Below are positions 15,693-63,419 of a stretch of 64,000 bases of DNA, in pieces. The DNA comes from Macrostomum hystrix. Taxonomy: Eukaryota; Animalia; Platyhelminthes. A program made the translations under genes and the position numbers. Position 1 is the first letter of the stretch. The number at the start of each line of letters is the position of its first letter. Below the pieces are notes generated by a model, which saw nothing but the letters and a program-made list of their open reading frames with translations, searched no databases and had not been told where the DNA came from. The stretch spans positions 4,154,001 to 4,218,000 of the forward strand of contig CATNEN010000037.1 in assembly GCA_950097015.1 (NCBI GenBank), given 5' to 3'.

Positions 15693-16391
15693 ATTGGAAA
15701 TCGCTGATGAAGAGTCTAAAGTGCAACAAGCCAAAAATGGCTCAGCTTCTTTCGTTTAAAAAAGTGCGAAATTGTTGTCGGTTCTTCACAAAGGCCATGA
15801 GTGCATCTCCTAATGCGCTGTTTCCGCGCATGTTGACGGTGCTGTCAAAACTTCTAGGGGGCTTACAGAACAAGCGAAGCGGCTGAGAGTTGCGCGCACC
15901 TGTTTCAGGTGTGTCTTTCAAGGCCTGAGGGGCTTCGATTTTGCACTGATTTCTTACTCAATTCTTTTTCCTGCAGGTCTGCGGGATGCTCGGAAGACTT
16001 ACGTGTCGTGTTAGAGTTTACACGACATCAATAATGCATTCACCGCAATGCTGAAAATGCAAGAAAATCGATATTGAAGACCGAGACCAATTTGGAATGG
16101 CCTTTCACGCTAAGCATTATAATTGCGGGCTGACTCAAATGATCGAATGACAGTTGAACTAGCACATAGCTCCTGCTATAGGGTAGTGCAGAGTGCTAAT
16201 TAAAATGGCTTGCAATTGCAATTGCAATGAATGAGCTAGTCACGAACTCATTCGTAACAAAAATTAAGCTACATAAACACGCTCGTGCATTGGCTGGAAA
16301 CGCCTAGCTGAAAAAATATAACGCAAAAGCTGCATTGGAAATGCATGTAAGGTACAGCTTGGTGTTAATTTCATGGAATGCATAGATTGGG

Positions 16392-27900: not shown

Positions 27901-30900
27901 CCGACGAAGCCGAGGCCGAGAAGGCCAGGCGGGAGCTGCTGGAGCTTCAGGTATGTCACCGTGTTGCCTCAATTAGATTTTTAAATACTCATTTGATCTC
28001 CCTCACAACCGGCCCTCACAGTCAGCCTACTCTCCCTCACAGTCAGCCTACTCTCCCTCACAGCCAGCCTACTCTCCCTCACAGTCAGCCTACTCTACCT
28101 CAGAGTCAGCCTACTCTCCCTCACAGTCAGCCTACTCTCCCTCACAGTCAGCCTACTCTCCCTCACAGTCAGCCTACTCTCCCTCTCAGCCTACTCTCCC
28201 TCACAGTCAGCCTACTCTCCCTCACAGTCAGCCTACTCTCCCTCACAGTCAGCCTACTCTCCCTCACAGCCAGTCTACTCTCCCTCACAGCCAGTCTACT
28301 CTCCCTCTCAGCCAGTCTACTCTCCCTCACAGCCAGTCTACTCTCCCTCACAGCCAGTCTACTCTCCCTCTCAGCCAGCCTACTCTCCCTCACAGTCAGC
28401 CTACTCTCCCTCACAGCCAGTCTACTCTCCCTCTCAGCCAGCCTACTCTCCCTCACAGCCAGCCTACTCTCCCTCTCAGCCAGCCTACTCTCCCTCACAG
28501 CCAGTCTACTCTCCCTCTAAGCCAGTCTACTCTCCCTCACAGCCAGCCTACTCTCCCTCTCAGCCAGCCTACTCTCCCTCACAGCCAGCCTACTCTCCCT
28601 CTCAGCCAGCCTACTCTCCCTCACAGCCAGTCTACTCTCCCTCTAAGCCAGTCTACTCTCCCTCACAGCCAGCCTACTCTCCCTCTCAGCCAGCCTCATC
28701 TCTCTCAGCCAGCCTTAACGAGGTTGATATTCTAAGCACCCTAAGCGCAAGCCGCTGTTATACCCGCTCAGGCGCACTCGGCGGCAGTGGAGAGCACCGG
28801 CCAGGCCAAGGCGGAGGCGCAGTCTCGCGCCGAGGCGGCCCGCATCGAGGGCCAGGCGGCCGTGGAGCAGGCCAGGCTGCGCTCCGAGGCGCTGGGCATC
28901 GAGTCCACCGCCGAGCTGGAGCGGGTGAAGCTGGCCCGCGAGGCCGAGCTGGCCTATCAGCGAGAGCAAAACGAGCTGGACGTGTCGCGCCAGAAGGAGC
29001 TGACGACAATCGAGGTCGAAAAGTTCAAGCGCTTCGTGGACGCCATCGGTGCCGACACCATACGCGCTATCGCCAACGCTGGCCCGGAGATGCAGGTGAG
29101 TGTGCGCCCGGCTGATGTTTGGGTCTGGGATCCCTGGACTTCGAGTCTGGAAAAAGAGTGTCGGAATTTGAGTTTCGGAATTGAGAGAGTCGGGAATGAC
29201 GGTTTCGGAATTGAGAGTGTCGGGAATGACGGTTTCGGAATTGAGAGAGTCGGGAATGACGGTTTCGGAATTGAGAGTGTCGGAATTTGAGTTTCGGAAT
29301 TGAGAGAGTCGGGAATGACGGTTTCGGAATTGAGAGTGTCGGGAATGACGGTTTCGGAATTGAGAGAGTCGGGAATGACGGTTTCGGAATTGAGAGTCGG
29401 GAATGACGGTTTCGGAATTGAGAGTGTCGGGAATGATGGTTTCGGAATTGAGAGAGTCGGGAATGACGGTTTCGGAATTGAGAGAGTCGGGAATGACGGT
29501 TTCGGAATTGAGAGTGTCGGGAATGACGGTTTCGGAATTGAGAGTGTCGGGAATGACGGTTTCGGAATTGAGAGTGTCAGGAATGATGGTTTCGGAATTG
29601 AGTGTCGGGAATGACGGTTTCGGAATTGAGAGTCGGGAATGACGGTTTCGGAATTGAGAGTGTCGGGAATGATGGTTTCGGAATTGAGAGAGTCGGGAAT
29701 GACAGTTTCGGAATTGAGAGAGTCGGGAATGACGGTTTCGGAATTGAGAGTGTCGGGAATGATGGTTTCGGAATTGAGAGTGTCGGGAATGACGGTTTCG
29801 GAATTGAGAGAGTCGGGAATGACGGTTTCGGAATTGAGAGTGTCGGGAATGATGGTTTCGGAATTGAGAGTGTCGGGAATGATGGTTTCGGAATTGAGAG
29901 CGTCGGGAATGACGGTTTCGGAATTGAGAGTGTCGGGAATGATGGTTTCGGAATTGAGTGTCGGGAATGACGGTTTCGGAATTGAGAGTCGGGAATGACG
30001 GTTTCGGAATTGAGAGTGTCGGGAATGACGGTTTCGGAATTGAGAGTGTCGGGAATGACGGTTTCAGAATTGAGAGTGTCGGGAATGACGGTTTCGGAAT
30101 TGAGAGTGTCGGGAATGATGGTTTCGGAATTGAGAGTGTCGGGAATGATGGTTTCGGAATTGAGAGTGTCGGGAATGATGGTTTCGGAATTGAGAGTGTC
30201 GGGAATGATGGTTTCGGAATTGAGAGTGTCGGGAATGATGGTTTCGGAATTGAGAGTGTCGGGAATGACGGTTTCGGAATTGAGAGTGTCGGGAATGACG
30301 GTTTCGGAATTGAGAGTGTCGGGAATGATGGTTTTCGGAATTGAGAGTGTCGGGAATGATGGTTTCGGAATTGAGAGTGTCGGGAATGACGGTTTCGGAA
30401 TTGAGAGTGTCGGGAATGATGGTTTCGGAATTGAGAGTGTCGGGAATGATGGTTTCGGAATTGAGAGTGTCGGGAATGATGGTTTCGGAATTGAGAGTGT
30501 CGGGAATGATGGTTTCGGAATTGAGAGTGTCGGGAATGATGGTTTCGGAATTGAGAGTGTCGGGAATGACGGTTTCGGAATTGAGAGTGTCGGGAATGAC
30601 GGTTTCGGAATTGAGAGTGTCGGGAATGATGGTTTCGGAATTGAGAGTGTCGGGAATGACGGTTTCGGAATTGAGAGTGTCGGGAATGATGGTTTCGGAA
30701 TTGAGAGTGTCGGAATGATGGTTTCGGAATTGAGAGTGTCGGGAATGACGGTTTCGGAATTGAGAGTGTCGGGAATGATGGTTTCGGAATTGAGAGTGTC
30801 GGGAATGATGGTTTCGGAATTGAGAGTGTCGGGAATGATGGTTTCGGAATTGAGAGTGTCGGGAATGATGGTTTCGGAATTGAGAGTGTCGGGAATGATG

Positions 30901-32703
30901 GTTTCGGAATTGAGAGTGTCGGGAATGACGGTTTCGGAATTGAGAGTTTCGGGAATGACGGTTTCGGAATTGAGAGTGTCGGGAATGATGGTTTCGGAAT
31001 TGAGAGTGTCGGGAATGATGGTTTCGGAATTGAGAGTGTCGGGAATAATGGTTTCGGAATTGAGAGTGTCGGGAATGATGGTTTCGGAATTGAGAGTGTC
31101 GGGAATGACGGTTTCGGAATTGAGAGTGTCGGGAATGATGGTTTCGGAATTGAGAGTGTCGGGAATGATGGTTTCGGAATTGAGAGTGTCGGAATGACGG
31201 TTTCGGAATTGAGAGTGTCGGGAATGATGGTTTCGGAATTGAGAGTGTCGGGAATGATGGTTTCGGAATTGAGAGTGTCGGGAATGATGGTTTCGGAATT
31301 GAGAGTGTCGGGAATGATGGTTTCGGAATTGAGAGTGTCGGGAATGATGGTTTCGGAATTGAGAGTGTCGGGAATGACGGTTTCGGAATTGAGAGTGTCG
31401 GGAATGACGGTTTCGGAATTGAGAGTGTCGGGAATGATGGTTTCGGAATTGAGAGTGTCGGGAATGATGGTTTTGGAATTGAGAGTGTCGGGAATAATGG
31501 TTTCGGAATTGAGAGTGTCGGGAATGATGGTTTCGGAATTGAGAGTGTCGGGAATGACGGTTTCGGAATTGAGAGTGTCGGGAATGACGGTTTCGGAATT
31601 GAGAGTGTCGGGAATGACGGTTTCGGAATTGAGAGTGTCGGGAATGACGGTTTCGGAATTGAGAGTGTCGGGAATGATGGTTTCGGAATTGAGAGTGTCG
31701 GGAATGACGGTTTCGGAATTGAGAGTGTCGGGAATGACGGTTTCGGAATTGAGAGTGTCGGGAATGACGGTTTCGGAATTGAGAGTGTCGGGAATGATGG
31801 TTTCGGAATTGAGTGTCGGGAATGACAGTTTCGGAATTGAGAATGTCTGGAATGACGGTTTCGGAATTGAGAGTGTCGGGAATGACGGTTTCGGAATTGA
31901 GAGTGTCGGGAATGATGGTTTCGGAATTGAGAGTGTCGGGAATGATGGTTTCGGAATTGAGAGTGTCGGGAATGATGGTTTCGGAATTGAGAGTGTCGGG
32001 AATGACGGTTTCGGAATTGAGAGTGTCGGGAATGACGGTTTCGGAATTGAGAATGTCGGGAATGACGGTTTCGGAATTGAGAGTGTCGGGAATGATGGTT
32101 TCGGAATTGAGAGTGTCGGGAATGATGGTTTCGGAATTGAGAGTGTCGGGAATGACGGTTTCGGAATTGAGAGTGTCGGGAATGACGGTTTCGGAATTGA
32201 GAATGTCGGGAATGATGGTTTCGGAATCGAGAGTGTCGGGAATGACGGTTTCGGAATTGAGAGTGTCGGGAATGACGGTTTCGGAATTGAGAATGTCGGG
32301 AATGACGGTTTCGGAATTGAGAGTGTCGGGAATGACGGTTTCGGAATTGAGAGTGTCGGGAATGATGGTTTCGGAATTGAGAGTGTCGGGAATGATGGTT
32401 TCGGAATTGAGAGTGTCTCGTAGCATTTTGTTGATTAATTGGGAATGAAGTTGAAGGATCAAGATCCCTTATTTTTATTTAGCGAATAAATATTAACTGA
32501 TTTAATAACTAAATAAATGAGGACAATTTGATTGCCCCCGCCAACAGGTGAAGATGCTGCAGAGCCTGGGCCTGAAGTCCACCCTCATCACGGACGGCAG
32601 CTCGCCAATCAACCTGTTCAGCACCGCCCACGGCCTGATTGGCGGCGAATTCTTTTCCAGGAACCAGCAGCGCGACCGGGGCTCCGAGCACGTGCCCGAG
32701 TAA
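24990..32703 (+). CDS. MVP: Major vault protein (two apparent +1 frameshifts at about 25892 and 26722)
   Basis: Exons 24990-25226, 25799-26099, 26282-26549, 26646-27950, 28772-29095, 32548-32703. Motifs: [114 protein letters not shown]. Confidence 0.97.
28005..28712. repeat. 21-bp minisatellite (cagcctactctccctcacagt)n in MVP intron 4
   Basis: About 33 copies. Confidence 0.95.
29158..32417. repeat. 30-bp minisatellite (gtcgggaatgacggtttcggaattgagagt)n in MVP intron 5
   Basis: About 108 highly similar copies over 3.26 kb. Confidence 0.98.
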
Positions 32704-49329: not shown

Positions 49330-52300
49330 TCAATCAGCGGCTTCGCTAGGGCGGCTCGCAAGCCAGTGGAAAGGCTTCGCCGGAAGGCCGGGCGGAGGAG
49401 CTGGGTATGCGGCAGCCCGCAATGGCTGACGCGGAGACGGGATAGACTGGGGAGATTGCAAGTTTAACGGCTTGAGCACCGAAGCGGCCTGGCCTGGAGA
49501 GCGGGCGTGTCAGCGGGGGAGTGCGTGAGTTCGAATCTATGAATAGATAATTTACTTACGAGTGCTCAAGTAGCTAGCGACAGTGTTCAGTTAGCGGTAG
49601 AGCATGCTGGGATCAGAGGGGGTTTAGCTAGCGGTAGAGCATGGTGGGATCAGAGGGGGTTTAGCTAGCGGTAGAGCATGCTAGGATCAGAGGGGGTTTA
49701 GCTAGCGGTAGAGCATGCTGGGATCAGAGGGGGTTTAGCTAGCGGTAGAGCATGCTGGGATCAGAGGGGGTTTAGCTAGCGGTAGAGCATGCTGGGATCA
49801 GAGGGGGTTTAGCTAGCGGTAGAGCATGCTGGGATCAAAGGGGGTTTAGCTAGCGGTAGAGCATGCTAGGATCAGAGGGGGTTTAGCTAGCGGTAGAGCA
49901 TGCTAGGATCAGAGGGGGTTTAGCTAGCGGTAAAGCATGCTGGGATCAGAGGGGGTTTAGCTAGCGGTAGAGCATGCTGGGATTGTTTCAGCTGGGAGCG
50001 TTTCCCGCTGACTAACCAGTTCTGATGCCCTGATGGCCGCTGTGGCCAGCGCTGCTCTCCAACGAATCCTTCTTAAAGTCACCGTCGCCGCTGCGAAGCT
50101 GGTCCTGCATGCAGAACAATTGTAGTTGGACGCTGCATCGAGTCAGCCGGGCGCTAACTGAACTGAGCTGCTGGCTGCTGCTGCTGGCGGCTGACAGACT
50201 CAGAGAGGCCAGATCGGCCCGAACGCCTGCCAGGGTGTTGGCGGCGACGAAGATTTTCTGACAGCTACAACTATCAATACTGCCATCGCTACTGACACTG
50301 CAACTGGCGGCACCACTAGCACCACGGCTGCGACTACCACAGACACTGCCAACTACACTGCCACTGCCACCGCCACTGCCCTCGCCACCGCTACTGCCAA
50401 CGACACTGCCACTGCCCTCGCCACCGCCACTGCCAACGACACTGCCCTCGCCACTGCCAACGACACTGCCACTGCCCTCGCCACCGCTACTGCCAACGAC
50501 ACTGCCACTGCCCTCGCCACCGCCACTGCCAACGACACTGCCACCGCCACTGCCCTCGCCACTGCCAACGACACTGCCACTGCCCTCGCCACCGCCACTG
50601 CCCTCGCCACCGCTACTGCCAACGACACTGCCACTGCCCTCGCCACCGCCACTGCCAACGACACTGCCACCGCCACTGCCCTCGCCACTGCCAACGACAC
50701 TGCCACTGCCCTCGCCACCGCCACTGCCCTCGCCACCGCTACTGCCAACGACACTGCCACCGCCACTGCCAACGACACTGCCACCGCCACTGCCAACGAC
50801 ACTGCCACTGCCCTCGCCACCGCCACTGCCCTCGCCACCGCCACTGCCAACGACACCGACACTGCCCTCGCCACCGCCACCCCCACTGCCACTGCCCTCG
50901 CCACTGCCCTCGCCAACGACACTGCCACCGCCACTGCTAACGACACTGCTAACGACACTGCCACCGCCACTGCCACTGCCAACGACACTGCCGACGACAC
51001 TGCCCCTGTCACTGACACTGCCACTGCCACTGCCGACGACATTGCCCCTGTCACTGACACCGCCACTGCCACTGCCAACGACACTGCCACCGCCACTGCT
51101 AACGACACCGACACTGCCACTGCCCTCGCCACCGCCACTGCCAACGACACTGCCCTCGCCACCGCAACTGCCAACGACACTGCCACCGCCACTGCCACTG
51201 CCCTCGCCACTGCCAACGACACTGCCACTGCCGACGACACTGCCGCTTTCAACAAATCCGCGACTGCCACTGCCAACGACACTGCCACTGCCCTCGCCAC
51301 CGCCACTGCCACTGCCGACGACACTGCCGCTTTCAACAAATCCGCGACTGCCACTGCCAACGACACTGCCACTGCCCTCGCCACCGCCACTGCCACTGCC
51401 GACGACACTGCCGCTGTCAACAAATCCGCGACTGCCACTGCCACTGCCAACGACACTGCCACTGCCAACGACACTGCCTCTGTCACTGACACCGCCACTG
51501 CCACTGCCACAGCCAACGACACTGCCGCTGTCAACAAATCCGCGACTGCCACCGCCACTGCCAACAAGACTGCTGCTGACAACGCCACCGCGACTGTGAC
51601 CGCTACAAACACTGGCTCTAACGCTGCCATGGCCGAAGCCAGAAAACTCATCGCCAGACTGCTGCTGCTGCTGCTTCTGATGGTTGGGCTCCAGGTCCGC
51701 CTGCTTTTGAAAGCCGCCGCCGCTGCCACATTTCTGCACGCCTGCGGAAAAAAATAGATGTTCGAGTAATGGAAACCTGATCCCTGGCTTGCTTGATCAC
51801 AGCAAATCTGCGCCCTCTCGGATATAGTCATGTTACTTTTTTACTGTAGCACTTTTTTAAAGAAATTAACTTGACTTGCGATTCTCTCTACTAAAAGAAA
51901 AGTGACTAATCAACACAATAACTATTCGCTGTAGGTTTCCATTTGACCAATCACTGAGCACAAGATCTTTGATGAAGGTTTCCATTTGACCAATCACTGA
52001 GCACAAGATCTTTGCTGTAGGTTTCTATTGACCAATCCCTGAGTTCAAGATCTTTGCTGTAGGTTTCTATTAACCAATCACTGAGTTCAAGATCTTTGCT
52101 GTAGGTTTCTATTGACCAATCACTGAGTTCAAGATCTTTGCTGAAGGTTTCTATTGACCAATCACTGAGTTCAAGATCTTTGCTGTAGGTTTCTATTAAC
52201 CAATCACTGAGTTCAAGATCTTTGCTGTAGGTTTCTATTGACCAATCACTGAGTTCAAGATCTTTGCTGAAGGTTTCCATTTGACCAATCACTGAGTTCA

Positions 52301-55300
52301 AGATCTTTGCTGAAGGTTTCCATTTGACCAATCCCTGAGTTCAAGATCTTTGCTGTAGGTTTCTATTGACCAATCACTGAGTTCAAGATCTTTGCTGTAG
52401 GTTTCTATTGACCAATCACTGAGTTCAAGATCTTTGCTGTAGGTTTCTATTGACCAATCACTGAGTTCAAGATCTTTGCTGTAGGTTTCTATTGACCAAT
52501 CACTGAGTTCAAGATCTTTGCTGTAGGTTTCTATTGACCAATCACTGAGTTCAAGATCTTTGCTGTAGGTTTCTATTGACCAATCACTGAGTTCAAGATC
52601 TTTGCTGTAGGTTTCTATTTGACCAATCACTGAGTTCAAGATCTTCGCTGAAGATTACGAGTGGCCGCTCGTACCTATGACCAATCACTGAATTCATGAT
52701 TGCACACTTTCTATGACGTGTTCGGAACAGAAAATCTGTTCTCTTTACGTTTTTACGTCTTTACGTCTTTACGTTAAAGAAAAATACGTTTTCTTTAATT
52801 GCTGCGTTTTAGGCTTAAAAAGTGACAAAAATGAATGCAACAATTTAGTTTTCACTTACCAAATAACTTTGACAACAATTTGTTATACTTGTCGAGCGGT
52901 TTCTGATCATCATGCGCAACAGTTGACTTGCTTTTCTGAAAAAATGAAAAAAAACTACGTTCATAAACTACAGCAGCGCATTAATCTTAAAATAGTGGAG
53001 TCCACAACTCACTGGCAGCTGTATGGGTAGACAGCCCAGCGACTTCTCGAACAAGATGGTGAGAAGCGAGCCGCGCACGCCGGACAGGTAGACAGAGTAG
53101 GCCGCGTACGGCTGAAAATGCGCGAGCCGTCTGGGTTGGAGGCTCTCTTAATCCAAAGAAATGCAAACTATACCCACCGCCTAAACTCACATCTTTCTCA
53201 TCCGAGGGCGCTTCATCAACGCTGAGCTTCAGCAAGCATTGCTGCGCATCTTCAGGCGAGCTGGGAGCCTGAGTCAGCAGCCGGAACATGCGGACGGTGA
53301 GCTGGTCGAAGTGGGCAGCGCCATCTCTGGGCGCAAGGAAGGCCAGGCGGCACAGGACGGCATGGGCGGGAATGCCCTCGGCGAAGCGTCGACGCAGGTA
53401 GCACAGGCTGGTCAGGGCGACCGTCAGAGTCTCGCCGTAGTCGACATCTTCAACCAGCAGCTGCAGCGTGTCAGCGCTGGCCGCAGCTACCCGGCGGACG
53501 ATTCTCACCCGACGTGAGCCCAGCTCGGTGGCGGCCTCGCACAACTGGCCGGGCCTGGCGTGCACCTCCGCCATTGGCTGGCCGGGCTCGCTCGAGTCCA
53601 TCTCCTCCATGAGCTTGTCCAGCCGGTTCGACACCTCGCCGTAGGGGATCACGAAGAAGCGGCCGGGCCCGGAGTTCGAGGCGGGCGGCACCAGGACGTC
53701 CTGCTGGTCGGCCAAGGTCCGCTGGCGACGCAGCCGCTCGACGGGCAGCCGGTAGCCGGGCGGCACGCAGTCGTCTGGGAAGGCCGGCGCCTTCGGGGCA
53801 AACGGCAGACGCGTGCCGTACACTGAGATTGGGAAATTCCCATCCATTGGATTTCGCATCACTGCGATCCCCGGCAGGCGAAGCAGTAAGTCCAAGCAGG
53901 TCTTTGCAGCCAATGTCCGAGTACCTGGGCAGCTGGCAACCAAAGCTGCAGGCATTGTATGTAAGGATTTTTCTCAATACTTACTATTATTTAATTATGA
54001 TAATGATAATCATACTAATGAGAGAGTAGACTCATCACCCAGTTCATCCCTACTAGAGTAGACTCATCACCCAGTTCATCCCTACTAGAGTAGACTCATC
54101 ACCCAGTTCATCCCTACTAGAGTATACTCATCACCCAGTTCATCCCTACAAGAGTATACTCATCACCCAGTTCATCCCTACTAGAGTATACTCATCACCC
54201 AGTTCATCTCTACTTTGTATGAAAAAGAAGTTTCCATGAAACAGAAGTTTCCATGAAACAGAAGTTTCCATGAAACAGAAGTTTCCATGAAACAGAAGTT
54301 TCCATGTAACAGAAGTTTCCATGAAACAAAAGTTTCCATGAAACAGAAGTTTCCATGAAACAGAAGTTTCCATGAAACAGAAGTTTCCATGAAACAAAAG
54401 TTTCCATGAAACAAAAATTTCCATGAAACAAAAGTTTCCATGAAACAGAAGTTTCCATGAAACAGAAGGTTCCATGAAACAGACGTTTCTATAATGTAAG
54501 TAACTCGCACACGCACCTCTCCCTGTACTTCTCTGGCAGCAGCAGGACTGGAAGGCCGGCGAAGTTGTGGGCTAGGCAGAGCAGCCGCCGCTTCACTTCA
54601 GCCGGCACGCTGAGCGGTCGCTTCTGCGCCGCCGCGCCAGATTTGACGGAGCTGCCGCACTCGGCCTTGACCTGGGCCGCAACCCGCAGGCAGCGATTGG
54701 AGTCGAAGGCCAGGCGGCCTGACTGCACCAGCCTGACTGCGAGCTCCTCAGCCGACGGGCAATTGAAGAGCTCCAGCGGCAGCGGTCGGTTAAAAAAGCA
54801 GGCGAAGGAGTCGACTAGGTCAGCGGGAGTCAGCGGCTGCATTAAATTCTCAGCGGCCACCCGCACAAGCTCCACCACGGCATCGGTGGCCGCCGCCCGG
54901 TCCGCTGCATGCCTTTGCTCCTGCTCCAACTGAAGCTCCCGATTGCGCTGAAGCTGCAGTTCCAGTTCGCGCTCCCGCTCGAGCTCTCGTCGGCGCTCCT
55001 CCTCCAGCTTCTGCTGAAAATCGGGATCTCGCGCCAATAGTTGGGACTCTGAGGCTGTCTTAGACTCACTCCGTGGTGGATCTGAATTGGTAAGGCAACT
55101 TAAATTAGCCAACTTTAGTGAGAGGAATTTATGAGGGGAGCTGCATTGAAGTTCCAAGGATGTGGGATCTGTACTGAAGAGCTACTCTAGGATCTGTACT
55201 GAAGCTAGTTTGGGATCTGTACTGAAGCTAGTGTGGGATCTGTACTGAAGCTAGTGTGGGATCTGTACTGAAGCTACTGTGGGAGCTGTACTGAAGCTAC

Positions 55301-56774
55301 TGTGGGAGCTGTACTGAAGCTACTGTGGGAGCTGTACTGAAGCTACTATGGAAGCTGTACTGAAGCTACTGTGGGAGCTGTACTGAAGCTACTGTGGGAG
55401 CTGTACTGAAGCTACTATGGAAGCTGTACTGAAGCTACTGTGGGAGCTGTACTGAAGCTACTGTGGGAGCTGTACTGAAGCTACTGCAGGATCTGTACTG
55501 AAGCTACTGTGGGAGCTGTACTGAAGCTACTGTGGGATCTGTACTGAAGCTGCTCTGAGATCTGTACTAAAGCTACTGCGGGATCTGTAGTGAAGCTACT
55601 GTGGAAGCTGTACTGAAGCTACTGCGGGATCTGTACTGAAGCTACTGCAGGATCTGTACTGAAGCTACTGTGGGAGCTGTACTGAAGCTACTGTGGGAGC
55701 TGTACAAAAGCTACTATGGGAGCTGTAGTGAAGCTACTGTGGGAGCTGTACTAAAGCTACTGTGGGAGCTGTACTGAAGCTACTATGGAAGCTGTACTGA
55801 AGCTACTGTGGGAGCTGTACTAAAGCTACTGTGGGAGCTGTACTGAAGCTACTGTGGGAGCTGTACTGCAGCTACTGCAGGATCTGTACTGAAGCTACTG
55901 TGGGAGCTGTACTGAAGCTACTGTGGGATCTGTACTGAAGCTGCTCTGAGATCTGTACTAAAGCTACTGCGGGATCTGTAGTGAAGCTACTGTGGAAGCT
56001 GTACTGAAGCTACTGCGGGATCTGTACTGAAGCTACTGTGGGAGCTGTACTGAAGCTACTGTGGGATCTGTACTGAAGCTGCTCTGAGATCTGTACTAAA
56101 GCTACTGCGGGATCTGTAGTGAAGCTACTGTGGAAGCTGTACTGAAGCTACTGCGGGATCTGTACTGAAGCTACTGCAGGATCTGTACTGAAGCTACTGT
56201 GGGAGCTGTACTGAAGCTACTGTGGGAGCTGTACAAAAGCTACTATGGGAGATGTAGTGAAGCTACTGTGGGAGCTGTACTAAAGCTACTGTGGGAGCTG
56301 TACTGAAGCTACTATGGAAGCTGTACTGAAGCTACTGTGGGAGCTGTACTAAAGCTACTGTGGGAGCTGTACTGAAGCTACTATGGAAGCTGTACTGAAG
56401 CTACTATGGAAGCTGTACTGAAGCTACTATGGAAGCTGTACTGAAGCTACTGTGGGAGCTGTACTAGCAATCAGTACTAGTCGACTAGAGCTACTACACT
56501 ACTAGTAGTAGCTCTCACCCTTGGCAGCCGCGGCCAAAACGAGCTTCACGCAGGACTCCCCATCGCAGTCGTAAACCTGCAGCCCTTTGACGGAGCTAAG
56601 GAAAGCTTCAACTGATTCGCTTTTAAACTTCTGCCATGGCAGCGGACACTTCAGGCACAGGGCGTACTCGCGAACCAGATCAGCGCAGGTGACACGGCGC
56701 TTGTACATCAGAGCCGGAACTCTCATGCAGCAGCGCAGATTCTGCGCAATCACCTCCGCCTCCGTGCTATTCAT
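49330..56774 (-). CDS. LOTUS/OST-HTH x3 plus extended Tudor domain protein with Gly/Ser-rich tail (TDRD5/TDRD7-like germ-granule protein)
   Basis: Exons 56774-56519 (LOTUS1), 55081-54517 (coiled coil, LOTUS2, start of LOTUS3), 53945-53191 (LOTUS3 end with a +1 frameshift at about 53903; Tudor GRFFVIP..RLDKLMEEM..PGQLC..RVRI..VDYGE..L..RF..IPAHAVLCRL), 53111-53013, about 51740-50017 (G/S-rich plus helical motif), putative 49493-49330. The junction into the G/S exon is uncertain. Confidence 0.75.
49590..49983. repeat. 37-bp minisatellite (gtagagcatgctgggatcagagggggtttagctagcg)n
   Basis: About 10 copies. Confidence 0.95.
51932..52690. repeat. 42-bp minisatellite (gtaggtttctattgaccaatcactgagttcaagatctttgct)n
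   Basis: About 18 copies, intronic. Confidence 0.96.
54027..54210. repeat. 32-bp minisatellite (gagtagactcatcacccagttcatccctacta)n
   Basis: About 5.5 copies, intronic. Confidence 0.93.
54225..54485. repeat. 17-bp minisatellite (gaagtttccatgaaaca)n
   Basis: About 15 copies, in the same intron as the 32-bp array. Confidence 0.95.
55165..56465. repeat. 23-bp minisatellite (gaagctactgtgggagctgtact)n
   Basis: About 56 copies with block duplications; intronic. Confidence 0.96.
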
Positions 56775-57319
56775 TGTTTAACTTGTTCTCTGCAATGAGC
56801 CACTGGTTTCCTGTGGACAGTATCAGAAAGATGTTTATTTTTAACTTCTCAAGAGTCAAGACGGCGAATGAGAAATTCAATGCTTCTGGACATCAATAGG
56901 CCACTTTAAGAGCGAGCGGAAATAGCTATAATCGACCTGAAGTTATAGCTCTAGGCGGTAGATACTAAGGGTTGAGCATTTAAAGTGTGGGTGGCTAAGG
57001 ACTGGTATTTGAACTAGAGATTATACTCAGATTAACAGCTCAAATGACTTTTTTAAATTTATATTTTTATAGACACACCCTCGTATAACACTAGACAGAC
57101 ATACACAAAGCAGAAGTAAAGTACAGTTTGCTCTATAAAATATCCGAAAGTTTAGAAGTTTGAAAATAAAAGAGCCTGTGTACAAAATTCAACATTAGGA
57201 GATAGAGAAAGTACACAAAAGACAAAAGTCATACTACTAATGCATGAAGAAACTACTAACTAACAGTAGTAGTTATCACATATTTATATTCAGTAGTAAG
57301 GAGAGCCGTCAACAGGGAG

Positions 57320-58772
57320 TCATTCGGCCTCGGAGCGCAGGTCATTGACCAGCAGGCGAACTAGGCCGGCCAGCTCAGCCATGCGATCAGGCGGCGTCTC
57401 CGGCAGAAGGCCGGCGCCAACGTTGAACACGTAGCGCCCGGTGCCGAATGTGCGCAGGGCTCGCCTGACGTGGTCGCGCAGCACATCGCCGGGAGCCCAG
57501 GCGACAAGGGCCGGGTCCAGGTTGCCCTGAACGGCAACTCCGGCAGCTTTGGCTACACGGCGGCAGTGCTCAGGCCGAACAGTGTGATCCACGCCAAGGA
57601 CATTGTAGCCGCTGCCGGCTAGCTCCTCCAGCGCGTAGTGACAGCCGGGAGCGAATAATATCAACGGCACGCCGGGGCCGACCCGGGCTCGAACCTCGGA
57701 CGCTAGGCGGCGCAGTCTGGGCAGGGCGAAGCGGCAGAATAGATCGGGGGTGAGGTGGCCCGCCAGCGGCTCAACCACCTGCAGGGCCTGCGGGTCAACG
57801 GGGAGCTGACTTATTGTCAACAGCATCAGTCAACAAAGACGAATATTTACATTTGCACCGCCAATTCCATCACACCTGCACCGCCCATTCCATCACGCCT
57901 GCACCGCCCATTCCATCACACCTGCACCGCCCATTTTCCATCACAGATCACACACAGACACCAACATCGAGCCTGGATGCTTGAATAATCACCTGAGCTC
58001 CAGCGGCCACCTGATCAGCCAGGAAGTCAACAAGCAGGTCGGTCAGCCGGTCCAGCAGCCGGTCGCAGGCTTCGGGCTCGGCGTAGAGCCAGCCGGCCGC
58101 CAGGGAAGCTTCCCCGGCCATGCGGGCCATGAGAGACCAAGGCGCGCCGGCCAAGCCCAGAAGGACGGCGCGGCCCATCAGGCGTCGCCGAGCCAAATTG
58201 ATGGCCTCCAAAACGCAGTGCAGTCGGCCGCGTGCCGCCGCGAATTCCAGACCAAGAGCGGCCGCGTCCGATGGTCCCGAAAGCGGTTCGGAGACGGCGA
58301 GGCCGGGTCGCCGATTGGCACCGACAACGCTCGGCCTCGCGATCAAGCCCAGAGCAATGGGCACCAGCATGATGTCCGTATAGATCGGCGCCGCATCCAG
58401 TTGGCAGCGAGTCAGGGGCAGCAGTGTCAGCTCGCTGGCCAGATGGGGATTTCGGCACAGCTCAGTGTGGCCGTGATGAGCCAGTAGCTGGCGGAATTCG
58501 GGCAGGTGCGGTCCAGACTGGCGCAGCAGCCACACCGGGACTCGGTCGGGTGATTCGCCGAGTGCGGCGCGCAGCAGAAGGTCGTTGATCAAGGGTGGAA
58601 GATCGCCCAAGTCAACGCTCACCGCAAAGTCCACCCCAGGTGGGCGGACGCGGTTAAAGCCGCGATGCCGCTGCTGTTGCAGCTTCTTTGGCTGCTGAAC
58701 TGGCAGCGTCTGCCATTGCTGATGCTGCAGAGTCGGCTGGCCCGGACTCGAGTGCGGATTTGGTAAGGACAG
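57320..58772 (-). CDS. UROD: Uroporphyrinogen decarboxylase homologue with degenerate active site (probable pseudo-enzyme)
   Basis: Exons 58772-57993 and 57787-57320 join in frame (GAQ|ALQ). Collinear with UROD (NDLLLRAALGE, PVW..RQ, ELTL.PL.R..LDAA..TDI..P.ALG, GAPW.L, QV.AGAQALQ, QGNLDP, RY..N.G.G..P). A possible 8-codon first exon lies at 59527-59504. Confidence 0.85.
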
Positions 58773-58832
58773 CTGAAGTTGGTTGAGCACAGGAAAATGA
58801 ACTCTAGAAAACTTTAAGTCATTTAGACAGCA

Positions 58833-59465
58833 ATCTGGGTGATCTACAGAAATCTGGGTGATCTACAGAAATCTGAGTCATGTACATAAGTCTGGGTGAT
58901 CTACAGAAATCTGAGTCATGTACATAAGTCTGGGTGATCAACAGAAATTTGGGTGATCTACAGAAATCTGAGTCATGTACATAAGTCTGGGTGATCTACA
59001 GAAATCTGAGTCATGTACATAAGTCTGGGTGATCTACAGAAATCTGGGTGATCTAAAGAAATCTGGGTGATCTACAGAAATCTGAGTCATGTACATAAGT
59101 CTGGGTGATCTACAGAAATCTGAGTCATGTACATAAGTCTGGGTGATCTACAGAAATCTGAGTCATGTACATAAGTCTGGGTGATCTACAGAAATCTGAG
59201 TCATGTACATAAGTCTGGGTGATCTACAGAAATCTGGGTGATCTAAAGAAATCTGGGTGATCTACAGAAATCTGAGTCATCTACATAAGTCTGGGTGATC
59301 TACAGAAATCTGAGTCATGTACATAAGTCTGGGTGATCTACAGAAATCTGAGTCATGTACATAAGTCTGGGTGATCAACAGAAATTTGGGTGATCTACAG
59401 AAATCTGAGTCATGTACATAAGTCTGGGTGATCTACAGAAGTCTGGGCGATCTACAGAAATCTGG
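58833..59465. repeat. Composite 19/38-bp minisatellite (gaaatctgggtgatctaca and gaaatctgagtcatgtacataagtctgggtgatctaca)
   Basis: Two related subunits alternating. Confidence 0.95.
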
Positions 59466-60102
59466 ATCATCGAGAAATATATGGGTCATATACATAAATC
59501 TACGTTCTTAACTGAATTCGGTGTCATCAATTGAAATCTCGGTCTACAGTCACGAGTGAATAACAACACGAGTCAATAGATGCAAATCTACTCAGTAATT
59601 CTGAAACAAGGCGAAAAAAAAACAATTTAAAAAAAAATCTGAATTTTATTACTTAAGAGAACAACACTAGAACTAGTGGAAGCACAACTGTGCATCGCTG
59701 ATAGCATGTAGCCTATTGCAGCCACATATATTTGTACACAGCTTACAATGGATTAGCATGTCACAGTATTGAAAGGCGTTTTTGGTGCGACAAAATGCAG
59801 AACAGGTCGATATTAGCAAGGAAAAATACTGAAAAACTTGTCACATAAAAACACGTGCGGCCAGGATAGACATGACACAACTAATGAAGATGCAAGATAA
59901 TTGGATCTCGATTGCTTGAATTACACGAGAGTAAAGATATAAAAAATGAATCAAGATAAATGGCTTTGACTGCTATCAAATAGATAAGCGGTGTATTATT
60001 GCTTGGGCAAGCATTGATTAAACAAACAGGAGGTTAAAGTAAAATTATTATTTTTTAACGCAAGCATGAAGAAAGTGTCTCAATGAAGGTAAGAAATTAG
60101 TT

Positions 60103-62811
60103 TCACTGCTGCCAAAAATAGCCCTCCTGAAAGAATGAAGCGCCTTGCATCTGTGAATGCGGCTGCTGCTGCTGCTGCCTGGGATTTATAGAAAGAAATG
60201 GCGGGCTCCAAGGGTTGCAAGGCATCAAGGGGCGAACAAACGTAGAGAAGTTGTACAAACCGGCCCCCTGAAAGAAGCTCGACTGCATCATCATTAGCGA
60301 CGGCGCAGGCTGGCCCTGAAGGTGTCCTACTGGCAAATTAAAAGGTGGCGCCGAGTTGGACACGGTGGAGTCGACAAAGTTGAAGACTTGCTGCTGCTGC
60401 TGATACTGCTGCGGTTCAATAGGCGACAAGCTGTCTGGCGGACGGGCCGGAAGCAGCGGGCGCAGGCCTGCATGGGCAGAGACAGTCAGAAATTTGTCCT
60501 GCTGCTGCTGCTGCTGTTGCCGCTGCTGCTGAATCGGCACAATAGGCGAAAAAAATGACAGCGCATTGGGATCCAGCTTGGACAAGGTGGAGCCAGAGTC
60601 GCGCTGAAGCCCTGGTCAATTGACAATGCAGGTGAAATCAAAGTAAAAATGATTAAAATCACAAATTATAAAAACTATTGAAACACGCAGAAAACTTTTG
60701 CTTGCAAAAACAACAGCGAAAACACTTTTTCAGACACGACACGATGCCGCAATGGCGAAGCTGGAAATCTCAAAACTGGCTATTACTGTACCTCCGTGCT
60801 AGCTACTACTAAAAACTCACGCTGCGGAGTTTTTGATTGGTCGCAATCTTCGTCGCTGCTATCTGATGTCTGCTGATGCTGCATGCAGTACTGCTGCAGC
60901 TGCACGGTGCATTTAGTCAGCCTAGCCAAAGCGGAGGCGCAGCCTAGCCGCCTAATGCTAGCCAGGTCGGCGCGAACTCCATCCAAGATGCTGGCTGCTG
61001 CAGAGATTTTCTGCTTTGGCCCGAGTTTCTCAGGCGCGGGACACAGGCTGCTGCTGACATTGGGAATCCAGTCCCCTAGGAATTTTGTTATTTGTTATGT
61101 TAGAGTGCACCGATGTGCAAAAAGAAACGCTAAGCTTTTAAGCCCAAAGAAATCTTCTTAAGGTGTGCTTGACTAAATAGAGCTTAATAGAGTCTTATGG
61201 TTATTAAGTTATTTAAAATCACAGATAAAAGTGCAAGACTTAAAAATAGTAGATTTCTTATCATTTACCTTCACTTCTAGCTTCGCTAGCATCGTCCAGC
61301 GGTTGATGGCCGTCAAACTGATCACTGTTGTGGTCGTCAAGAAGGAAGTCTTTAGAGTCTGTAAGGTATTAATAAAATGGTATAGCTTTATGTGCAGTCG
61401 GGTTTAGAAACCTCTTTACAGAAAGGATCCGGTTTGCCCAGATATAAAAATGCTCCAGGTGAGAAAATCTGGATTCGGATAGATTTACCGGACCCAGTTT
61501 GACTGTGACATATCTGACCCACAAAACAATACTGCTAAAATCTATTCTTTAAACAGCTGGTACAAAATCAACAACATCATTGAAGATTATAATTTAATCA
61601 TAAAAATAATGGACTACAGTTGTGCAGATGACAGCTGAAGGTGCGCGGCGTACCCAATAAAGGCTGCGTACGACTGTTCAGTCCATGGACTGGGGATGCG
61701 CCACACACACCCTTAATTACCACTGCTAATGCTGGTACTCATTTTTAAAGCAACCCAGAGTAAAGTGTCTTTGCGAAAGGACACAAATTGTTTCGGTAAA
61801 GTCGGGAATCGAACCCCGAACCTCCAAGCCGAAAGTACGACTCTTTAACCACTAGACGACAACCCCCTAGTGGTGCTTATAGTTAACTGAAATTGTTCTT
61901 AGCCGAACAGAGCTGCGTGTCTAATTGGCAAGCAAGTTCAACTAAAAAATGTGCTTAATAAATGAGTCAATGCGCTTAAAGACAGCAAACATACTTTAAT
62001 ACAAATTCAAAAACGCGAAGTAATCATAGTTAAAGTGCAAGGATATAAAAAAGTAGATTTCTTGTCATTTACCTTCACTTCTAGCTTTAGGACCATCGTC
62101 CAGCGGTTGATGGCCGTCAAACTGGTTGCGGTCGTCAAGAAGGAAGTCTTTCGAGTCTGTAAGGTATTAATAAAATGAAATATTTATGCAGTATTTAGCA
62201 TGTAGGTCGTATTTAAAAAGTCAATGTAGCAAAGTGGGAAAAAGCCTGTTTCAGGCAGAAATATCTTTACAGGAACGGATCTACCAGGAGAGAAAATCTG
62301 TATCCTCTAATTTGTAATTTAATAATAATAACTTATTAAACTTGTTTCATTTGGGCAAGATGTGCAGCCGACAGTTCAATGTGCAAGGCGCGGCGCCTCT
62401 GAAGGCTGCGTACGGCCGTTCAGTCCATGGACAGGGGACGCGCCACACCCACCCTAAATTACCCCAGCTAATGCTGGTACTGGTACCCATTCAACAGCTA
62501 AGTGAACTAAAGCAACGCAGAGTTAATTGTCTTTCGAAAGGACACAAACAGTTGCGGTAAATTCGAGAATCGAACTCCCAACCTTGTAGTCGTAAGTCTG
62601 ATATCTAACCACAAGGGTACAGCCCCCTAGACGTGTTTTTAAAAATAATCAAAACGCGAAGTACTGTTAGATAAAAGTGCATGGATATAAAAAGATTCGA
62701 TTTGATGTCATTTACCTTCACTTCTAGCTTCGCTAGCATCGTCCAGCAGTTGATGGCCGTCAAACTGATCACTGTGCTGGTTGTGGTCGTCAAGAAGGAA
62801 GTCTTTGGAGT
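60103..62811 (-). CDS. 3' part of an uncharacterised Gln/Pro-rich protein sharing a helical motif with the LOTUS-Tudor gene; 5' exons not identified
   Basis: Phase-1 exons 62811-62716, 62156-62073, 61358-61269 (triplicate), 61075-60821 and 60611-60103 all join in frame at GT-AG sites. Confidence 0.7.
61670..61865 (-). mobile_element. tRNA-derived SINE, family B copy 1
   Basis: gctggtactc...tgtctttgcgaaaggacacaa...gggaatcgaacccc...taaccactagac is an antisense tRNA head (B-box ggttcgattccc) plus body. A second copy is at 62415-62612 and a short 3'-end remnant at about 12150. Confidence 0.7.
62415..62612 (-). mobile_element. tRNA-derived SINE, family B copy 2
   Basis: Diverged homologue of 61670-61865, part of the tandem segmental duplication. 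Confidence 0.7.
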
Positions 62812-63419
62812 CTGTAAGGTATTAATAAGATGAAATAGTAAACCTGGAAAACTAAAAAATAAGAGACTGGACCGTTATATTTCAGGAAAAGTTTCCTGAC
62901 GAACTTTTCGATGGGTCAAAGCCCTTAGATCTTGTCAACTGCAGCCCTCATAACCCCCGAGGTCATAACACTTGCCAGCCTTATAGCTTTCAGGTGACCT
63001 AAGTGTTAATATTTGACTATTTCAAAATATTATTTGACTGGACAGAATTTTCTCACCATTTTTCTCAGATTGGCAATTGCTCTGGATCCTTTTATAGTGT
63101 TCCTTTGCGATGCTCTGAAATAATAAAGACTACAAAGTTGTGCGCCTGGTTTGACAGTTCGCACAATTACAAAGGAAGGGCAAAAAAAACACCTACAGAA
63201 ATCTGAATCGGCATTTTTCCGAGTGACTTCTCGCAGAATAACGACAGAAACGAGCCGCTATCACCAGTTAGATACACGGAATACGGTGCCTCCGACTAAA
63301 ATATAAAAATATTTGTAGACTAGTGAAATCAGCATCAGCAGCTAAAGAAATATTGACAAGGTGAGAAAATACTAGGAAACTGGAAGAGGGAAGACAATTT
63401 TACAAACTAATAGAACCGA

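What the first reader, a model, noticed from the sequence alone, without database searches (positions are those of the whole stretch)
57320..58772. UROD homologue with an intact ORF but a dismantled active site: candidate porphyrin-binding pseudo-enzyme
Seen: an intact two-exon ORF collinear with uroporphyrinogen decarboxylase. Against recalled human UROD, R37 and D86 are kept. R41 becomes P (RQAGRY to RQSGPH), Y164 becomes R (PWTLMTYM to PWSLMARM), S219 becomes P (FESH to VEPL) and H339 becomes A (NLGHG to NVGAG). The loop after Y164 is shortened and a Gln-rich N-terminal extension is added. Known: these residues line the substrate site and both UROD signatures are broken. Inference: four targeted losses with no stops or frameshifts suggest a retained paralogue with a new role, such as tetrapyrrole binding/sensing, a regulatory dimer partner, or altered substrate. 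It is probably not the housekeeping heme enzyme.
Basis: partly seen in the sequence, partly recalled or inferred. Interest (0 to 1): 0.8.

Follow-up and report, generated by a model that had tools for sequence, protein, structure and literature searches.

The report
Remodelled UROD-family gene in a flatworm
A free-living flatworm (Macrostomum) expresses and conserves a copy of the haem-pathway enzyme uroporphyrinogen decarboxylase that keeps its two core catalytic residues but has a rebuilt substrate pocket, so it probably now binds or processes a different tetrapyrrole.

Summary
On the minus strand, exon 1 (58772-57993), a 205-nt GT..AG intron and exon 2 (57787-57320) encode a 416-aa UROD-fold protein. 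R37 and D86 (human numbering) are kept. R41P, Y164R, S219P and H339A are all present.

It is not a pseudogene or an assembly error. Transcript contigs from three runs carry the spliced form plus the Macrostomum spliced leader. The leader's AUG supplies the start codon, because the genome has no in-frame ATG there.

The syntenic M. lignano orthologue (76% identical) carries the same substitutions, and dN/dS is about 0.15 at dS about 1.

The remodelling is wider than reported. Of 99 columns conserved in 275 canonical URODs, 25-26 are changed in both species, including R50L, F55H, I82P, F154L and F217V. A new His cluster (AHHGH) is also conserved. The M. lignano orthologue, and the summed halves of the window protein, score below the NCBIfam hemE equivalog cut-off; canonical controls pass.

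"Dismantled active site / pseudo-enzyme" is not shown, since the catalytic Asp and Arg remain. I could not test whether a canonical UROD coexists.

My best reading is a neo-functionalised UROD-derived tetrapyrrole binder or altered-specificity decarboxylase.

The parts
58773..58774 (-). AG trans-splice acceptor. The spliced leader ending in ...TTGCATG is joined here, and its AUG is codon 1.
   Evidence: The loose end at 58773 in contigs of X3, X4 and X5 is the reverse complement of CGAAGACTCAATTTATTGCAT(G). This matches the 3' end of the M. lignano SL, CGGTCTCTTACTGCGAAGACTCAATTTATTGCATG (PMC8629364). There is no in-frame genomic ATG upstream.
57993..58772 (-). Exon 1, codons 2-261: N-terminal extension plus the first half of the UROD barrel.
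   Evidence: Pfam URO-D profile positions 3-200; human UROD residues 11-212; contig pieces 57992-58773.
58602..58772 (-). N-terminal extension (residues 2-58). It is Gln/Pro-rich and basic, with no acidic residue before D49.
   Evidence: Sequence. In the model of the M. lignano orthologue the first 50 residues have low confidence (10-residue block means pLDDT 43-68), with one predicted helix at 24-40. It is the least conserved part: 55% identity, dN/dS 0.18.
58521..58523 (-). Arg85, equivalent to human R37, kept.
58509..58511 (-). Pro89, equivalent to human R41 (R in 98% of canonical URODs).
   Evidence: The same Pro is present in M. lignano.
58467..58478 (-). His cluster H100-H101-G102-H103 (human A52, Q53, D54, F55), conserved in both species.
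   Evidence: F55 is F in 95% of canonical URODs and never H.
58374..58376 (-). Asp134, equivalent to human D86, kept (invariant in the 275 canonical URODs).
58122..58124 (-). Arg218, equivalent to human Y164 (Y 94% / F 6% in canonical URODs, never R).
57788..57992 (-). Intron, 205 nt, GT..AG, phase 0, between AGAQ and ALQV. It holds a 23-nt x 3.9 tandem repeat at 57854-57945.
   Evidence: Skip of 205 nt in contigs of three runs. The intron sits at the same position in M. lignano. Tandem Repeats Finder result.
57320..57787 (-). Exon 2 coding part, codons 262-416, plus the TGA stop at 57322-57320.
   Evidence: Pfam URO-D profile positions 201-343; human UROD residues 213-353; contigs.
57767..57769 (-). 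Pro268, equivalent to human S219 (S/T in 99.7% of canonical URODs).
57413..57415 (-). Ala386, equivalent to human H339 (H in 93% of canonical URODs).
57243..57319 (-). 3' UTR, short form. One contig runs on past 57100.
   Evidence: Contigs of X3 and X5 end at 57243. The X4 contig continues at least 200 nt beyond 57100.

Best explanation
This is a functional, selectively maintained Macrostomum protein derived from uroporphyrinogen decarboxylase. It is not a pseudogene and probably not a standard UROD. Shown: the mRNA is SL trans-spliced (the leader donates the AUG), cis-spliced, and encodes 416 aa. The M. lignano orthologue is predicted to keep the UROD (beta/alpha)8 barrel. The Asp and Arg that sit against the tetrapyrrole macrocycle (D86, R37) are kept. 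The surrounding shell is replaced in the same way in two species separated by dS of about 1: R41P, R50L, F55H, S85T, Y164R, S219P, H220L and H339A, which include the UniProt-listed substrate-binding residues, and the conserved hydrophobic residues M36L, I82P, F154L and F217V. Inferred: the cleft still takes a tetrapyrrole-type ring, but not with uroporphyrinogen's eight carboxylates gripped in the canonical way. The new lining is less polar and His-rich (H90, H100, H101, H103, H329, plus R218). It would suit a less carboxylated or metal-bearing tetrapyrrole such as copro- or protoporphyrin(ogen), haem, or a dietary chlorophyll breakdown product. The protein would then act as a carrier, buffer or sensor, or as a decarboxylase of restricted or altered specificity, most likely beside a canonical UROD.
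For: Expression and processing: with the SL sequence checked. Same gene structure, conserved neighbouring genes and same substitutions in M. lignano. Purifying selection: dN/dS 0.147 overall, 0.13 in the domain, bootstrap pN/pS 0.20-0.30. In 99 columns that are at least 75% conserved in 275 canonical URODs, 26 differ in both species (one of them a shared gap), and the window protein deviates at 32 against a median of 9. The replaced residues are 92% identical between species, against 76-77% at variable columns. Binding-site residues are enriched among the changes (p=0.034; residue list from PMC3510221). TIGR01464 hemE: 256.8 bits for the orthologue and 137.8+100.5 for the window halves, against a cut-off of 302.95; controls score 357-444. 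The stem branch is 1.3 substitutions per site against a median tip of 0.58. The fold is retained: pLDDT 89.9, TM 0.94 and rmsd 1.4 A to human UROD. The exhaustive HMMER search finds no intermediate relatives; the next best is 46% identical.
Against: No canonical UROD of Macrostomum was found or excluded, so the paralogue part is inference. D86 and R37 are intact. PDB titles show human Y164F, D86E and D86G mutants crystallised with the product coproporphyrinogen bound, which suggests single changes at these sites need not abolish turnover. Y164R could replace the charge lost at R41. There is no ligand-binding or activity data. The conservation of the replaced residues is not significantly above background (p about 0.1). 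The structure model is of the orthologue, was built on an alignment of canonical URODs, and gives no pocket coordinates here. GC-rich composition bias could account for some replacements (flagged).
Confidence: 0.55

Rival explanations
1. It is the only UROD of Macrostomum and still performs the housekeeping decarboxylation. The carboxylate-binding residues have relocated (for example R218 compensating for the lost R41, and the new His residues for H339 and H220).
For: D86, R37 and most glycine/proline framework motifs are kept. Purifying selection is strong. The gene is SL trans-spliced and moderately covered in transcriptomes. The haem pathway is reported present in platyhelminths (10.1101/236539). 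No second Macrostomum UROD surfaced in any search, though those searches could not have shown one reliably.
Against: Residues that are 93-99% invariant from bacteria to vertebrates (R41, F154, F217, S/T219, Y/F164, H339, F55, I82) are all replaced. It scores below the hemE equivalog cut-off. The stem branch is about three times longer than those of other eukaryotic URODs. This pattern is unusual for an essential single-copy enzyme.
Confidence: 0.25
2. It is a UROD-fold enzyme that has moved to a non-tetrapyrrole substrate or to different chemistry, as the MtaA/CmuA methyltransferases did within the same superfamily.
For: The superfamily has precedents for new chemistry (4ay7). Six new Cys and several new His residues are conserved in both species and could form a metal site.
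Against: MtaA/CmuA models score 58.6 bits against a cut-off of 235.4, no better than canonical URODs do. The closest relatives are true URODs at 43-46% identity. The tetrapyrrole-contacting D86 and R37 are retained.
Confidence: 0.1
3. It is a decaying duplicate (pseudogene) that merely happens to be open.
For: It lacks a genomic start codon and has several hallmark substitutions.
Against: The start codon is supplied by the spliced leader in three transcriptome runs. dN/dS is 0.15 at dS of about 1, with no stops or frameshifts in either species, and the intron and neighbouring genes are conserved.
Confidence: 0.02
4. It is a bacterial contaminant, a horizontally acquired hemE, or an assembly artefact.
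For: The CDS is GC-rich (66%, GC3 73%) within AT-richer flanks. Word-based searches returned GC-rich bacterial hemE proteins at 40-44% identity.
Against: The gene has a spliceosomal intron and is SL trans-spliced. The locus is syntenic in M. lignano. The tree places it in the eukaryote-type clade. RNA contigs match the window nearly perfectly.
Confidence: 0.01

Closest known systems
Uroporphyrinogen decarboxylase (UROD/HemE, EC 4.1.1.37; human structures 1URO, 1R3Q)
   Same: It belongs to the Pfam URO-D domain end to end and is collinear with human UROD. The orthologue's predicted barrel superposes on human UROD at rmsd 1.4 A with 42% identity. D86, R37, QGNLDP and NxGxG are retained.
   Different: Six of the 11 UniProt-listed binding residues are replaced, as are F154, F217, R50, I82 and H220. 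The loop after Y164 is 5 residues shorter. There is a 58-aa N-terminal extension. New His and Cys residues are conserved in both species. It scores below the TIGR01464 equivalog cut-off.
Nematode ferrochelatase-like (FeCL) proteins
   Same: They are a precedent for a haem-pathway enzyme fold kept in a worm lineage as a diverged gene of unknown function (10.1101/236539).
   Different: They come from a different enzyme and a different phylum. Nematodes lack the haem pathway altogether, whereas platyhelminths are reported to have it. No sequence relationship exists.
MtaA/MtbA/CmuA methylcobamide:CoM methyltransferases (UROD superfamily)
   Same: They share the fold and superfamily and show that the barrel can be re-purposed (4ay7).
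   Different: Scores lie far below their family cut-offs (58.6 against 235.4) and are no higher than for canonical URODs. The protein is clearly nested among true URODs.
Flatworm genes that take their initiator AUG from the spliced leader
   Same: The SL ends in AUG and is joined in frame directly to codon 2. The G3 genome paper notes that the Macrostomum SL likely contains the final ATG as a start codon (PMC10468722).
   Different: In the M. lignano orthologue the same codon is a genomic ATG (TTCATGCTGTCC against the window's TTCAG|CTGTCC). The two species appear to reach the same N-terminus in different ways. The M. lignano transcript was not examined.

Membership tests
Pfam URO-D superfamily (PF01208) | Score above the gathering threshold (23.9 bits) over the full domain. 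| tested here: met
   153 + 109 bits for the two window halves, covering profile positions 3-343. The orthologue scores 274 bits.
HemE/UROD equivalog (NCBIfam TIGR01464) | Whole-protein score at or above the curated cut-off of 302.95 bits. | tested here: not met
   The M. lignano orthologue scores 256.8. The window halves score 137.8 + 100.5 = 238. Canonical controls (amoebozoan, chytrid, truncated fish isoform, bacterium) score 420, 424, 357 and 444.
UROD (functional enzyme) | Macrocycle-contacting/catalytic Asp86 and Arg37. | tested here: met
   D134 and R85 are present in the window protein and in M. lignano. D86 is 100% and R37 is 99% conserved in 275 canonical URODs.
UROD (functional enzyme) | Substrate-binding residues R37-R41, F55, S85, Y164, S219 and H339 (UniProt P06132 list as quoted in PMC3510221). 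| tested here: not met
   R41P, F55H, S85T, Y164R, S219P and H339A are present in both species, and A39S in the window species only.
UROD (functional enzyme) | Conversion of uroporphyrinogen III to coproporphyrinogen III. | not testable with these tools
   This needs an enzyme assay or complementation.
UROD fold | (beta/alpha)8 barrel superposable on solved URODs. | tested here: met
   AlphaFold model of the orthologue P0001: pLDDT 89.9. Foldseek to 1URO and 1JPI: TM 0.94 (normalised to the target), rmsd 1.4 A. Caveat: the alignment was made of canonical URODs, and the window protein itself could not be submitted because it is spliced.
Pseudoenzyme | Loss of residues indispensable for catalysis while the fold is conserved. 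| tested here: inconclusive
   Binding residues are lost, but D86 and R37 are kept.
Pseudoenzyme / neo-functionalised paralogue | An active canonical paralogue coexists in the same genome. | not testable with these tools
   Word-based searches were biased towards GC-rich bacteria and list only the best 120 hits. Representative clusters hide species. Supplements of four papers gave nothing.
MtaA/CmuA methyltransferases | Score above the family cut-off (235.4 bits). | tested here: not met
   58.6 bits, in the same range as canonical URODs at 38-57.
SL trans-spliced Macrostomum gene | Transcript 5' end carries the Macrostomum spliced leader joined at an AG acceptor. | tested here: met
   21 nt of SL form a loose end at 58773 in three runs. 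This is identical to the 3' end of the published SL.

The most novel reading that the evidence does not exclude
This would be the first animal protein built from the UROD barrel that no longer makes coproporphyrinogen. Instead it would hold a haem, porphyrin or chlorophyll catabolite through a new His-rich lining, as a tetrapyrrole carrier, buffer or sensor. In a transparent, diatom-eating worm, such a protein could limit porphyrin phototoxicity or route dietary or intermediate tetrapyrroles.
Probability: 0.3. Interest if true: 0.7.

Novelty: new variant of a known kind. Interest (0 to 1): 0.55.

Why it matters
UROD is among the most conserved enzymes of tetrapyrrole synthesis and, to my knowledge, is usually a single canonical gene in animals. 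The held literature returned no paper linking Macrostomum with uroporphyrinogen or porphyrin metabolism, and none describing a UROD pseudoenzyme. Two outcomes are possible, and both are informative. If a canonical copy exists, this is a clean natural example of a haem-pathway enzyme re-purposed into a tetrapyrrole-handling protein, in a genetically tractable flatworm where RNAi, in situ hybridisation and transgenesis are available. If it is the only UROD, then residues treated as hallmarks of the active site (R41, Y164, S219, H339, F154, F217) are dispensable or replaceable. That would revise the structural account of substrate recognition. The gene also illustrates start-codon donation by a spliced leader, with a sister species encoding the same Met in its genome.

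Tried and rejected
1. Search for a canonical Macrostomum UROD. The search for homologous proteins with exon 1 and with the orthologue's domain returned only the variant from Macrostomum. However, candidate selection by shared words favoured GC-rich bacteria; the two best unnamed hits proved bacterial. Known eukaryotic URODs with better E-values were missing from the list. The blank therefore says nothing.

2. Cluster look-ups for 20 representatives named no flatworm.

3. The third protein search was left unused. No query available here would rank a flatworm UROD within the 120 rows shown.

4. Literature: there are no papers for Macrostomum plus uroporphyrinogen and none relevant for Macrostomum with haem or porphyrin. 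The gene id Mlig023397 occurs in no main text. Neither it nor UROD occurs in the supplements of four Macrostomum papers.

5. Earlier scan notes hold nothing on haem-pathway genes.

6. Bacterial origin or contamination was considered because of the GC content and the bacterial top hits. It was rejected on the intron, the spliced leader, the synteny and the tree.

7. A pseudogene was rejected on dN/dS and RNA evidence.

8. A zinc methyltransferase-like function was considered because of the new Cys and His residues. Family scores do not support it.

9. The N-terminal extension was considered as a mitochondrial presequence, since it is basic and acid-free. It is also Gln/Pro-rich and poorly conserved, and no predictor was available, so this stays open.

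10. The window's own spliced protein could not be submitted for folding or exhaustive search because it is not a single reference. The M. lignano orthologue was used as a proxy.

Full report
**What is there**

The minus strand between 58774 and 57243 holds one gene. Reading the strand and listing ORFs gives two open pieces. Both hit Pfam URO-D back to back: profile positions 3-200 and 201-343, with E-values 1.4e-44 and 3.2e-31. They align collinearly with human UROD structures at residues 11-212 and 213-353.

I placed the intron at 57992..57788 (GT..AG, 205 nt, phase 0), because joining AGAQ to ALQVVEPL restores the human AGAQALQIFES. The CDS is GC-rich (66%, GC3 73%) and sits in AT-richer flanks.

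- Against human UROD, R37 and D86 are kept.
- R41P, Y164R, S219P and H339A are all present, together with Y42H, F217V and H220L.
- The loop after Y164 is 5 residues shorter.
- A 58-residue Gln/Pro-rich extension precedes the domain.

**Expression and gene model**

Six public runs hold the stretch. Four of them hold about 0.8 of its words, which is the exonic share. I laid three of those four runs (one 2020 study) on 57100-58840; each gave one contig that does three things:
- It skips exactly 57788-57992.
- It matches the window at 0-1 differences over 1326 nt.
- It carries a 21-nt loose end at 58773 whose reverse complement is CGAAGACTCAATTTATTGCAT.

With the next G, that loose end is the 3' end of the published Macrostomum lignano spliced leader, CGGTCTCTTACTGCGAAGACTCAATTTATTGCATG (PMC8629364).

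The leader's AUG is joined in frame to CTG TCC TTA, giving M-L-S-L-P-N-P... and a 416-aa protein. Upstream of the acceptor the frame is closed by a stop with no intervening ATG. The gene therefore depends on the leader for its start codon. The G3 paper on Macrostomum genomes notes that the SL probably contributes the ATG (PMC10468722).

Two contigs end at 57243, which gives a 3' UTR of about 77 nt. One contig runs on past 57100. The run kind is not on record, but a spliced, SL-bearing form can only be RNA.

**Organism and orthologue**

The only close relative among 5.8 billion clustered proteins is M. lignano BOX15_Mlig023397g1 (P0001). A garbled UniRef model of the same gene (P0002) also appears.

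An exhaustive HMMER pass over 1.84 billion representatives finds nothing between these two and canonical URODs at 46% identity or less.

The two M. lignano loci (L001, L002) share several features with the window gene:
- They have the same two exons, with the intron at the same codon boundary.
- They have the same flanking genes in the same order and orientation.

The window therefore comes from another Macrostomum species, and the loci are orthologous.

**Selection**

A codon alignment gives dS 1.05 and dN 0.155, so dN/dS is 0.147. For the domain it is 0.13 and for the N-terminal extension 0.18. The bootstrap range for pN/pS is 0.20-0.30. There are no stops or frameshifts in either species. 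This excludes a decaying pseudogene.

**How far the protein departs from UROD**

I aligned both Macrostomum proteins with 275 canonical URODs, from bacteria to vertebrates.

At the 35 columns that are at least 95% conserved, three are changed in both species: R41P, F154L and F217V. The framework is kept, including P32, W34, R37, Q38, G40, D79, D86, the G/P motifs, QGNLDP and NxGxG.

At the 99 columns that are at least 75% conserved, 26 differ in both species (one of them a shared gap). They include M36L, R41P, Y42H, R50L, F55H, I82P, S85T, F154L, Y164R, E167G, F217V, S219P, H220L (W in most URODs), L337V and H339A. The window protein deviates at 32 of these columns and M. lignano at 27. The median for canonical sequences is 9 and the 95th percentile is 23.

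UniProt's binding-site list for human UROD, as quoted in PMC3510221, is R37-R41, F55, S85, D86, Y164, S219 and H339. Six of these 11 residues are changed in both species, against 20 of the other 88 conserved columns (Fisher p=0.034).

The replacement residues are themselves conserved between the species: 23 of 25, or 92%. This equals the retained canonical positions (90%) and is higher than variable columns (76-77%), though not significantly so (p about 0.1).

New features shared by both species are a His cluster near the cleft and six Cys residues. The His residues are H90 and the AHHGH stretch with H100, H101 and H103, the last replacing F55. H329 is also shared. The Cys residues occupy positions where canonical URODs have none or almost none.

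Formally, the M. lignano orthologue scores 256.8 bits on the NCBIfam hemE equivalog TIGR01464, and the window halves score 137.8 + 100.5. The curated cut-off is 302.95. Four canonical controls score 357-444.

In a tree, the Macrostomum pair sits in the eukaryote-type clade on a stem of 1.3 substitutions per site, against a median tip of 0.58. Its sister group is unresolved. Both rows were flagged for unusual composition.

**Fold**

AlphaFold2 on P0001 with a 141-sequence alignment gives a mean pLDDT of 89.9. In the first 50 residues the 10-residue block means are pLDDT 43-68. Foldseek puts human UROD first, with TM 0.94 normalised to the target, rmsd 1.4 A and 42% identity.

The barrel is therefore expected to be intact. 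This model rests on canonical sequences and gave me no coordinates for inspecting the pocket.

**Interpretation**

What is shown:
- The gene is expressed and constrained.
- The protein keeps the UROD barrel and the two residues tied most closely to contact with the macrocycle and to the chemistry.
- The shell of conserved substrate-binding and hydrophobic residues around them has been replaced, and that replacement has since been held fixed.

What is inferred: it still accommodates a tetrapyrrole-type ligand, but not uroporphyrinogen in the canonical manner. It may act as a carrier, buffer or sensor, or as a decarboxylase of changed specificity.

A long stem followed by strong constraint is the usual signature of a change of function, most often after duplication. 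Platyhelminths are reported to possess the haem pathway (10.1101/236539), so a canonical UROD probably coexists. I could not test this.

The main rival is that this is the only UROD and remains active with relocated binding residues. Three points keep it alive:
- D86 and R37 are retained.
- R218 could compensate for the lost R41.
- PDB entries show human Y164F, D86E and D86G mutants with product bound.

I put the remodelled-function reading at about 0.55 and the sole-enzyme rival at 0.25. A move to other chemistry gets about 0.1, and a pseudogene, artefact or horizontal transfer together get under 0.05.

"Dismantled active site / pseudo-enzyme" overstates what the sequence shows.

**Limits and compliance**

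- The window's spliced protein has no single reference, so the exhaustive search and the fold used the M. lignano orthologue.
- Nothing here concerns toxins, effectors or viruses.
- The third homologous-protein search was not used, because no available query could rank a flatworm UROD within the 120 rows displayed.
- The scan's notebook holds no earlier finding of this feature on other DNA.

Noticed in passing
window 58770-58776 (-) against L001 9985-10000: The start codon is supplied by the spliced leader in the window species (genomic TTCAG|CTGTCC). The M. lignano orthologue has a genomic ATG at the same codon (TTCATGCTGTCC). A single-base difference separates an AG acceptor from an ATG, and both routes give the N-terminus MLSLPNP. 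M. lignano transcripts were not examined.
   Followed up: partly
window 58834-59471: A tandem array of a 38-nt unit (16.8 copies, 89% matches) begins about 60 nt upstream of the trans-splice acceptor, in the presumed outron or promoter region.
   Followed up: no
window 57854-57945: The only intron contains a 23-nt unit repeated 3.9 times (TGCACCGCCAATTCCATCACACC on the + strand).
   Followed up: no
window 58220: G>C on the + strand in contigs of two runs from two studies (X5, X1) changes codon 186 from His to Asp. This looks like a segregating non-synonymous polymorphism. M. lignano has His here.
   Followed up: partly
window 56900-57243 and 56502-56774 (-): One transcript contig (X4) extends at least 340 nt beyond the usual 3' end, towards the next gene on the same strand, whose ATG at 56774 lies only about 550 nt from the UROD-like stop. 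This could be a long 3' UTR isoform or polycistronic read-through, as in Macrostomum operons.
   Followed up: no
window 50000-56770 and 60100-63310 (-); L001 3109-7388 and 13772-22400: The two genes flanking the UROD-like gene resemble each other: tblastx of the upstream M. lignano gene hits both window flanks. Both flanks are conserved in order and orientation in M. lignano. Neither has a Pfam hit on record.
   Followed up: partly
window 16000-19000 and 29000-32000: Blocks with extreme GC skew (0.6-0.9 over 1-kb windows) suggest long strand-asymmetric G-rich repeats. Parts of them matched the repeat-rich M. lignano intron in tblastx.
   Followed up: no
P0025 (Phlyctochytrium planicorne KAJ3105929.1): This chytrid UROD gene model carries a C-terminal Ras-family GTPase domain (Pfam Ras, 1.5e-44). 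It is probably a fused gene model rather than a real fusion.
   Followed up: no
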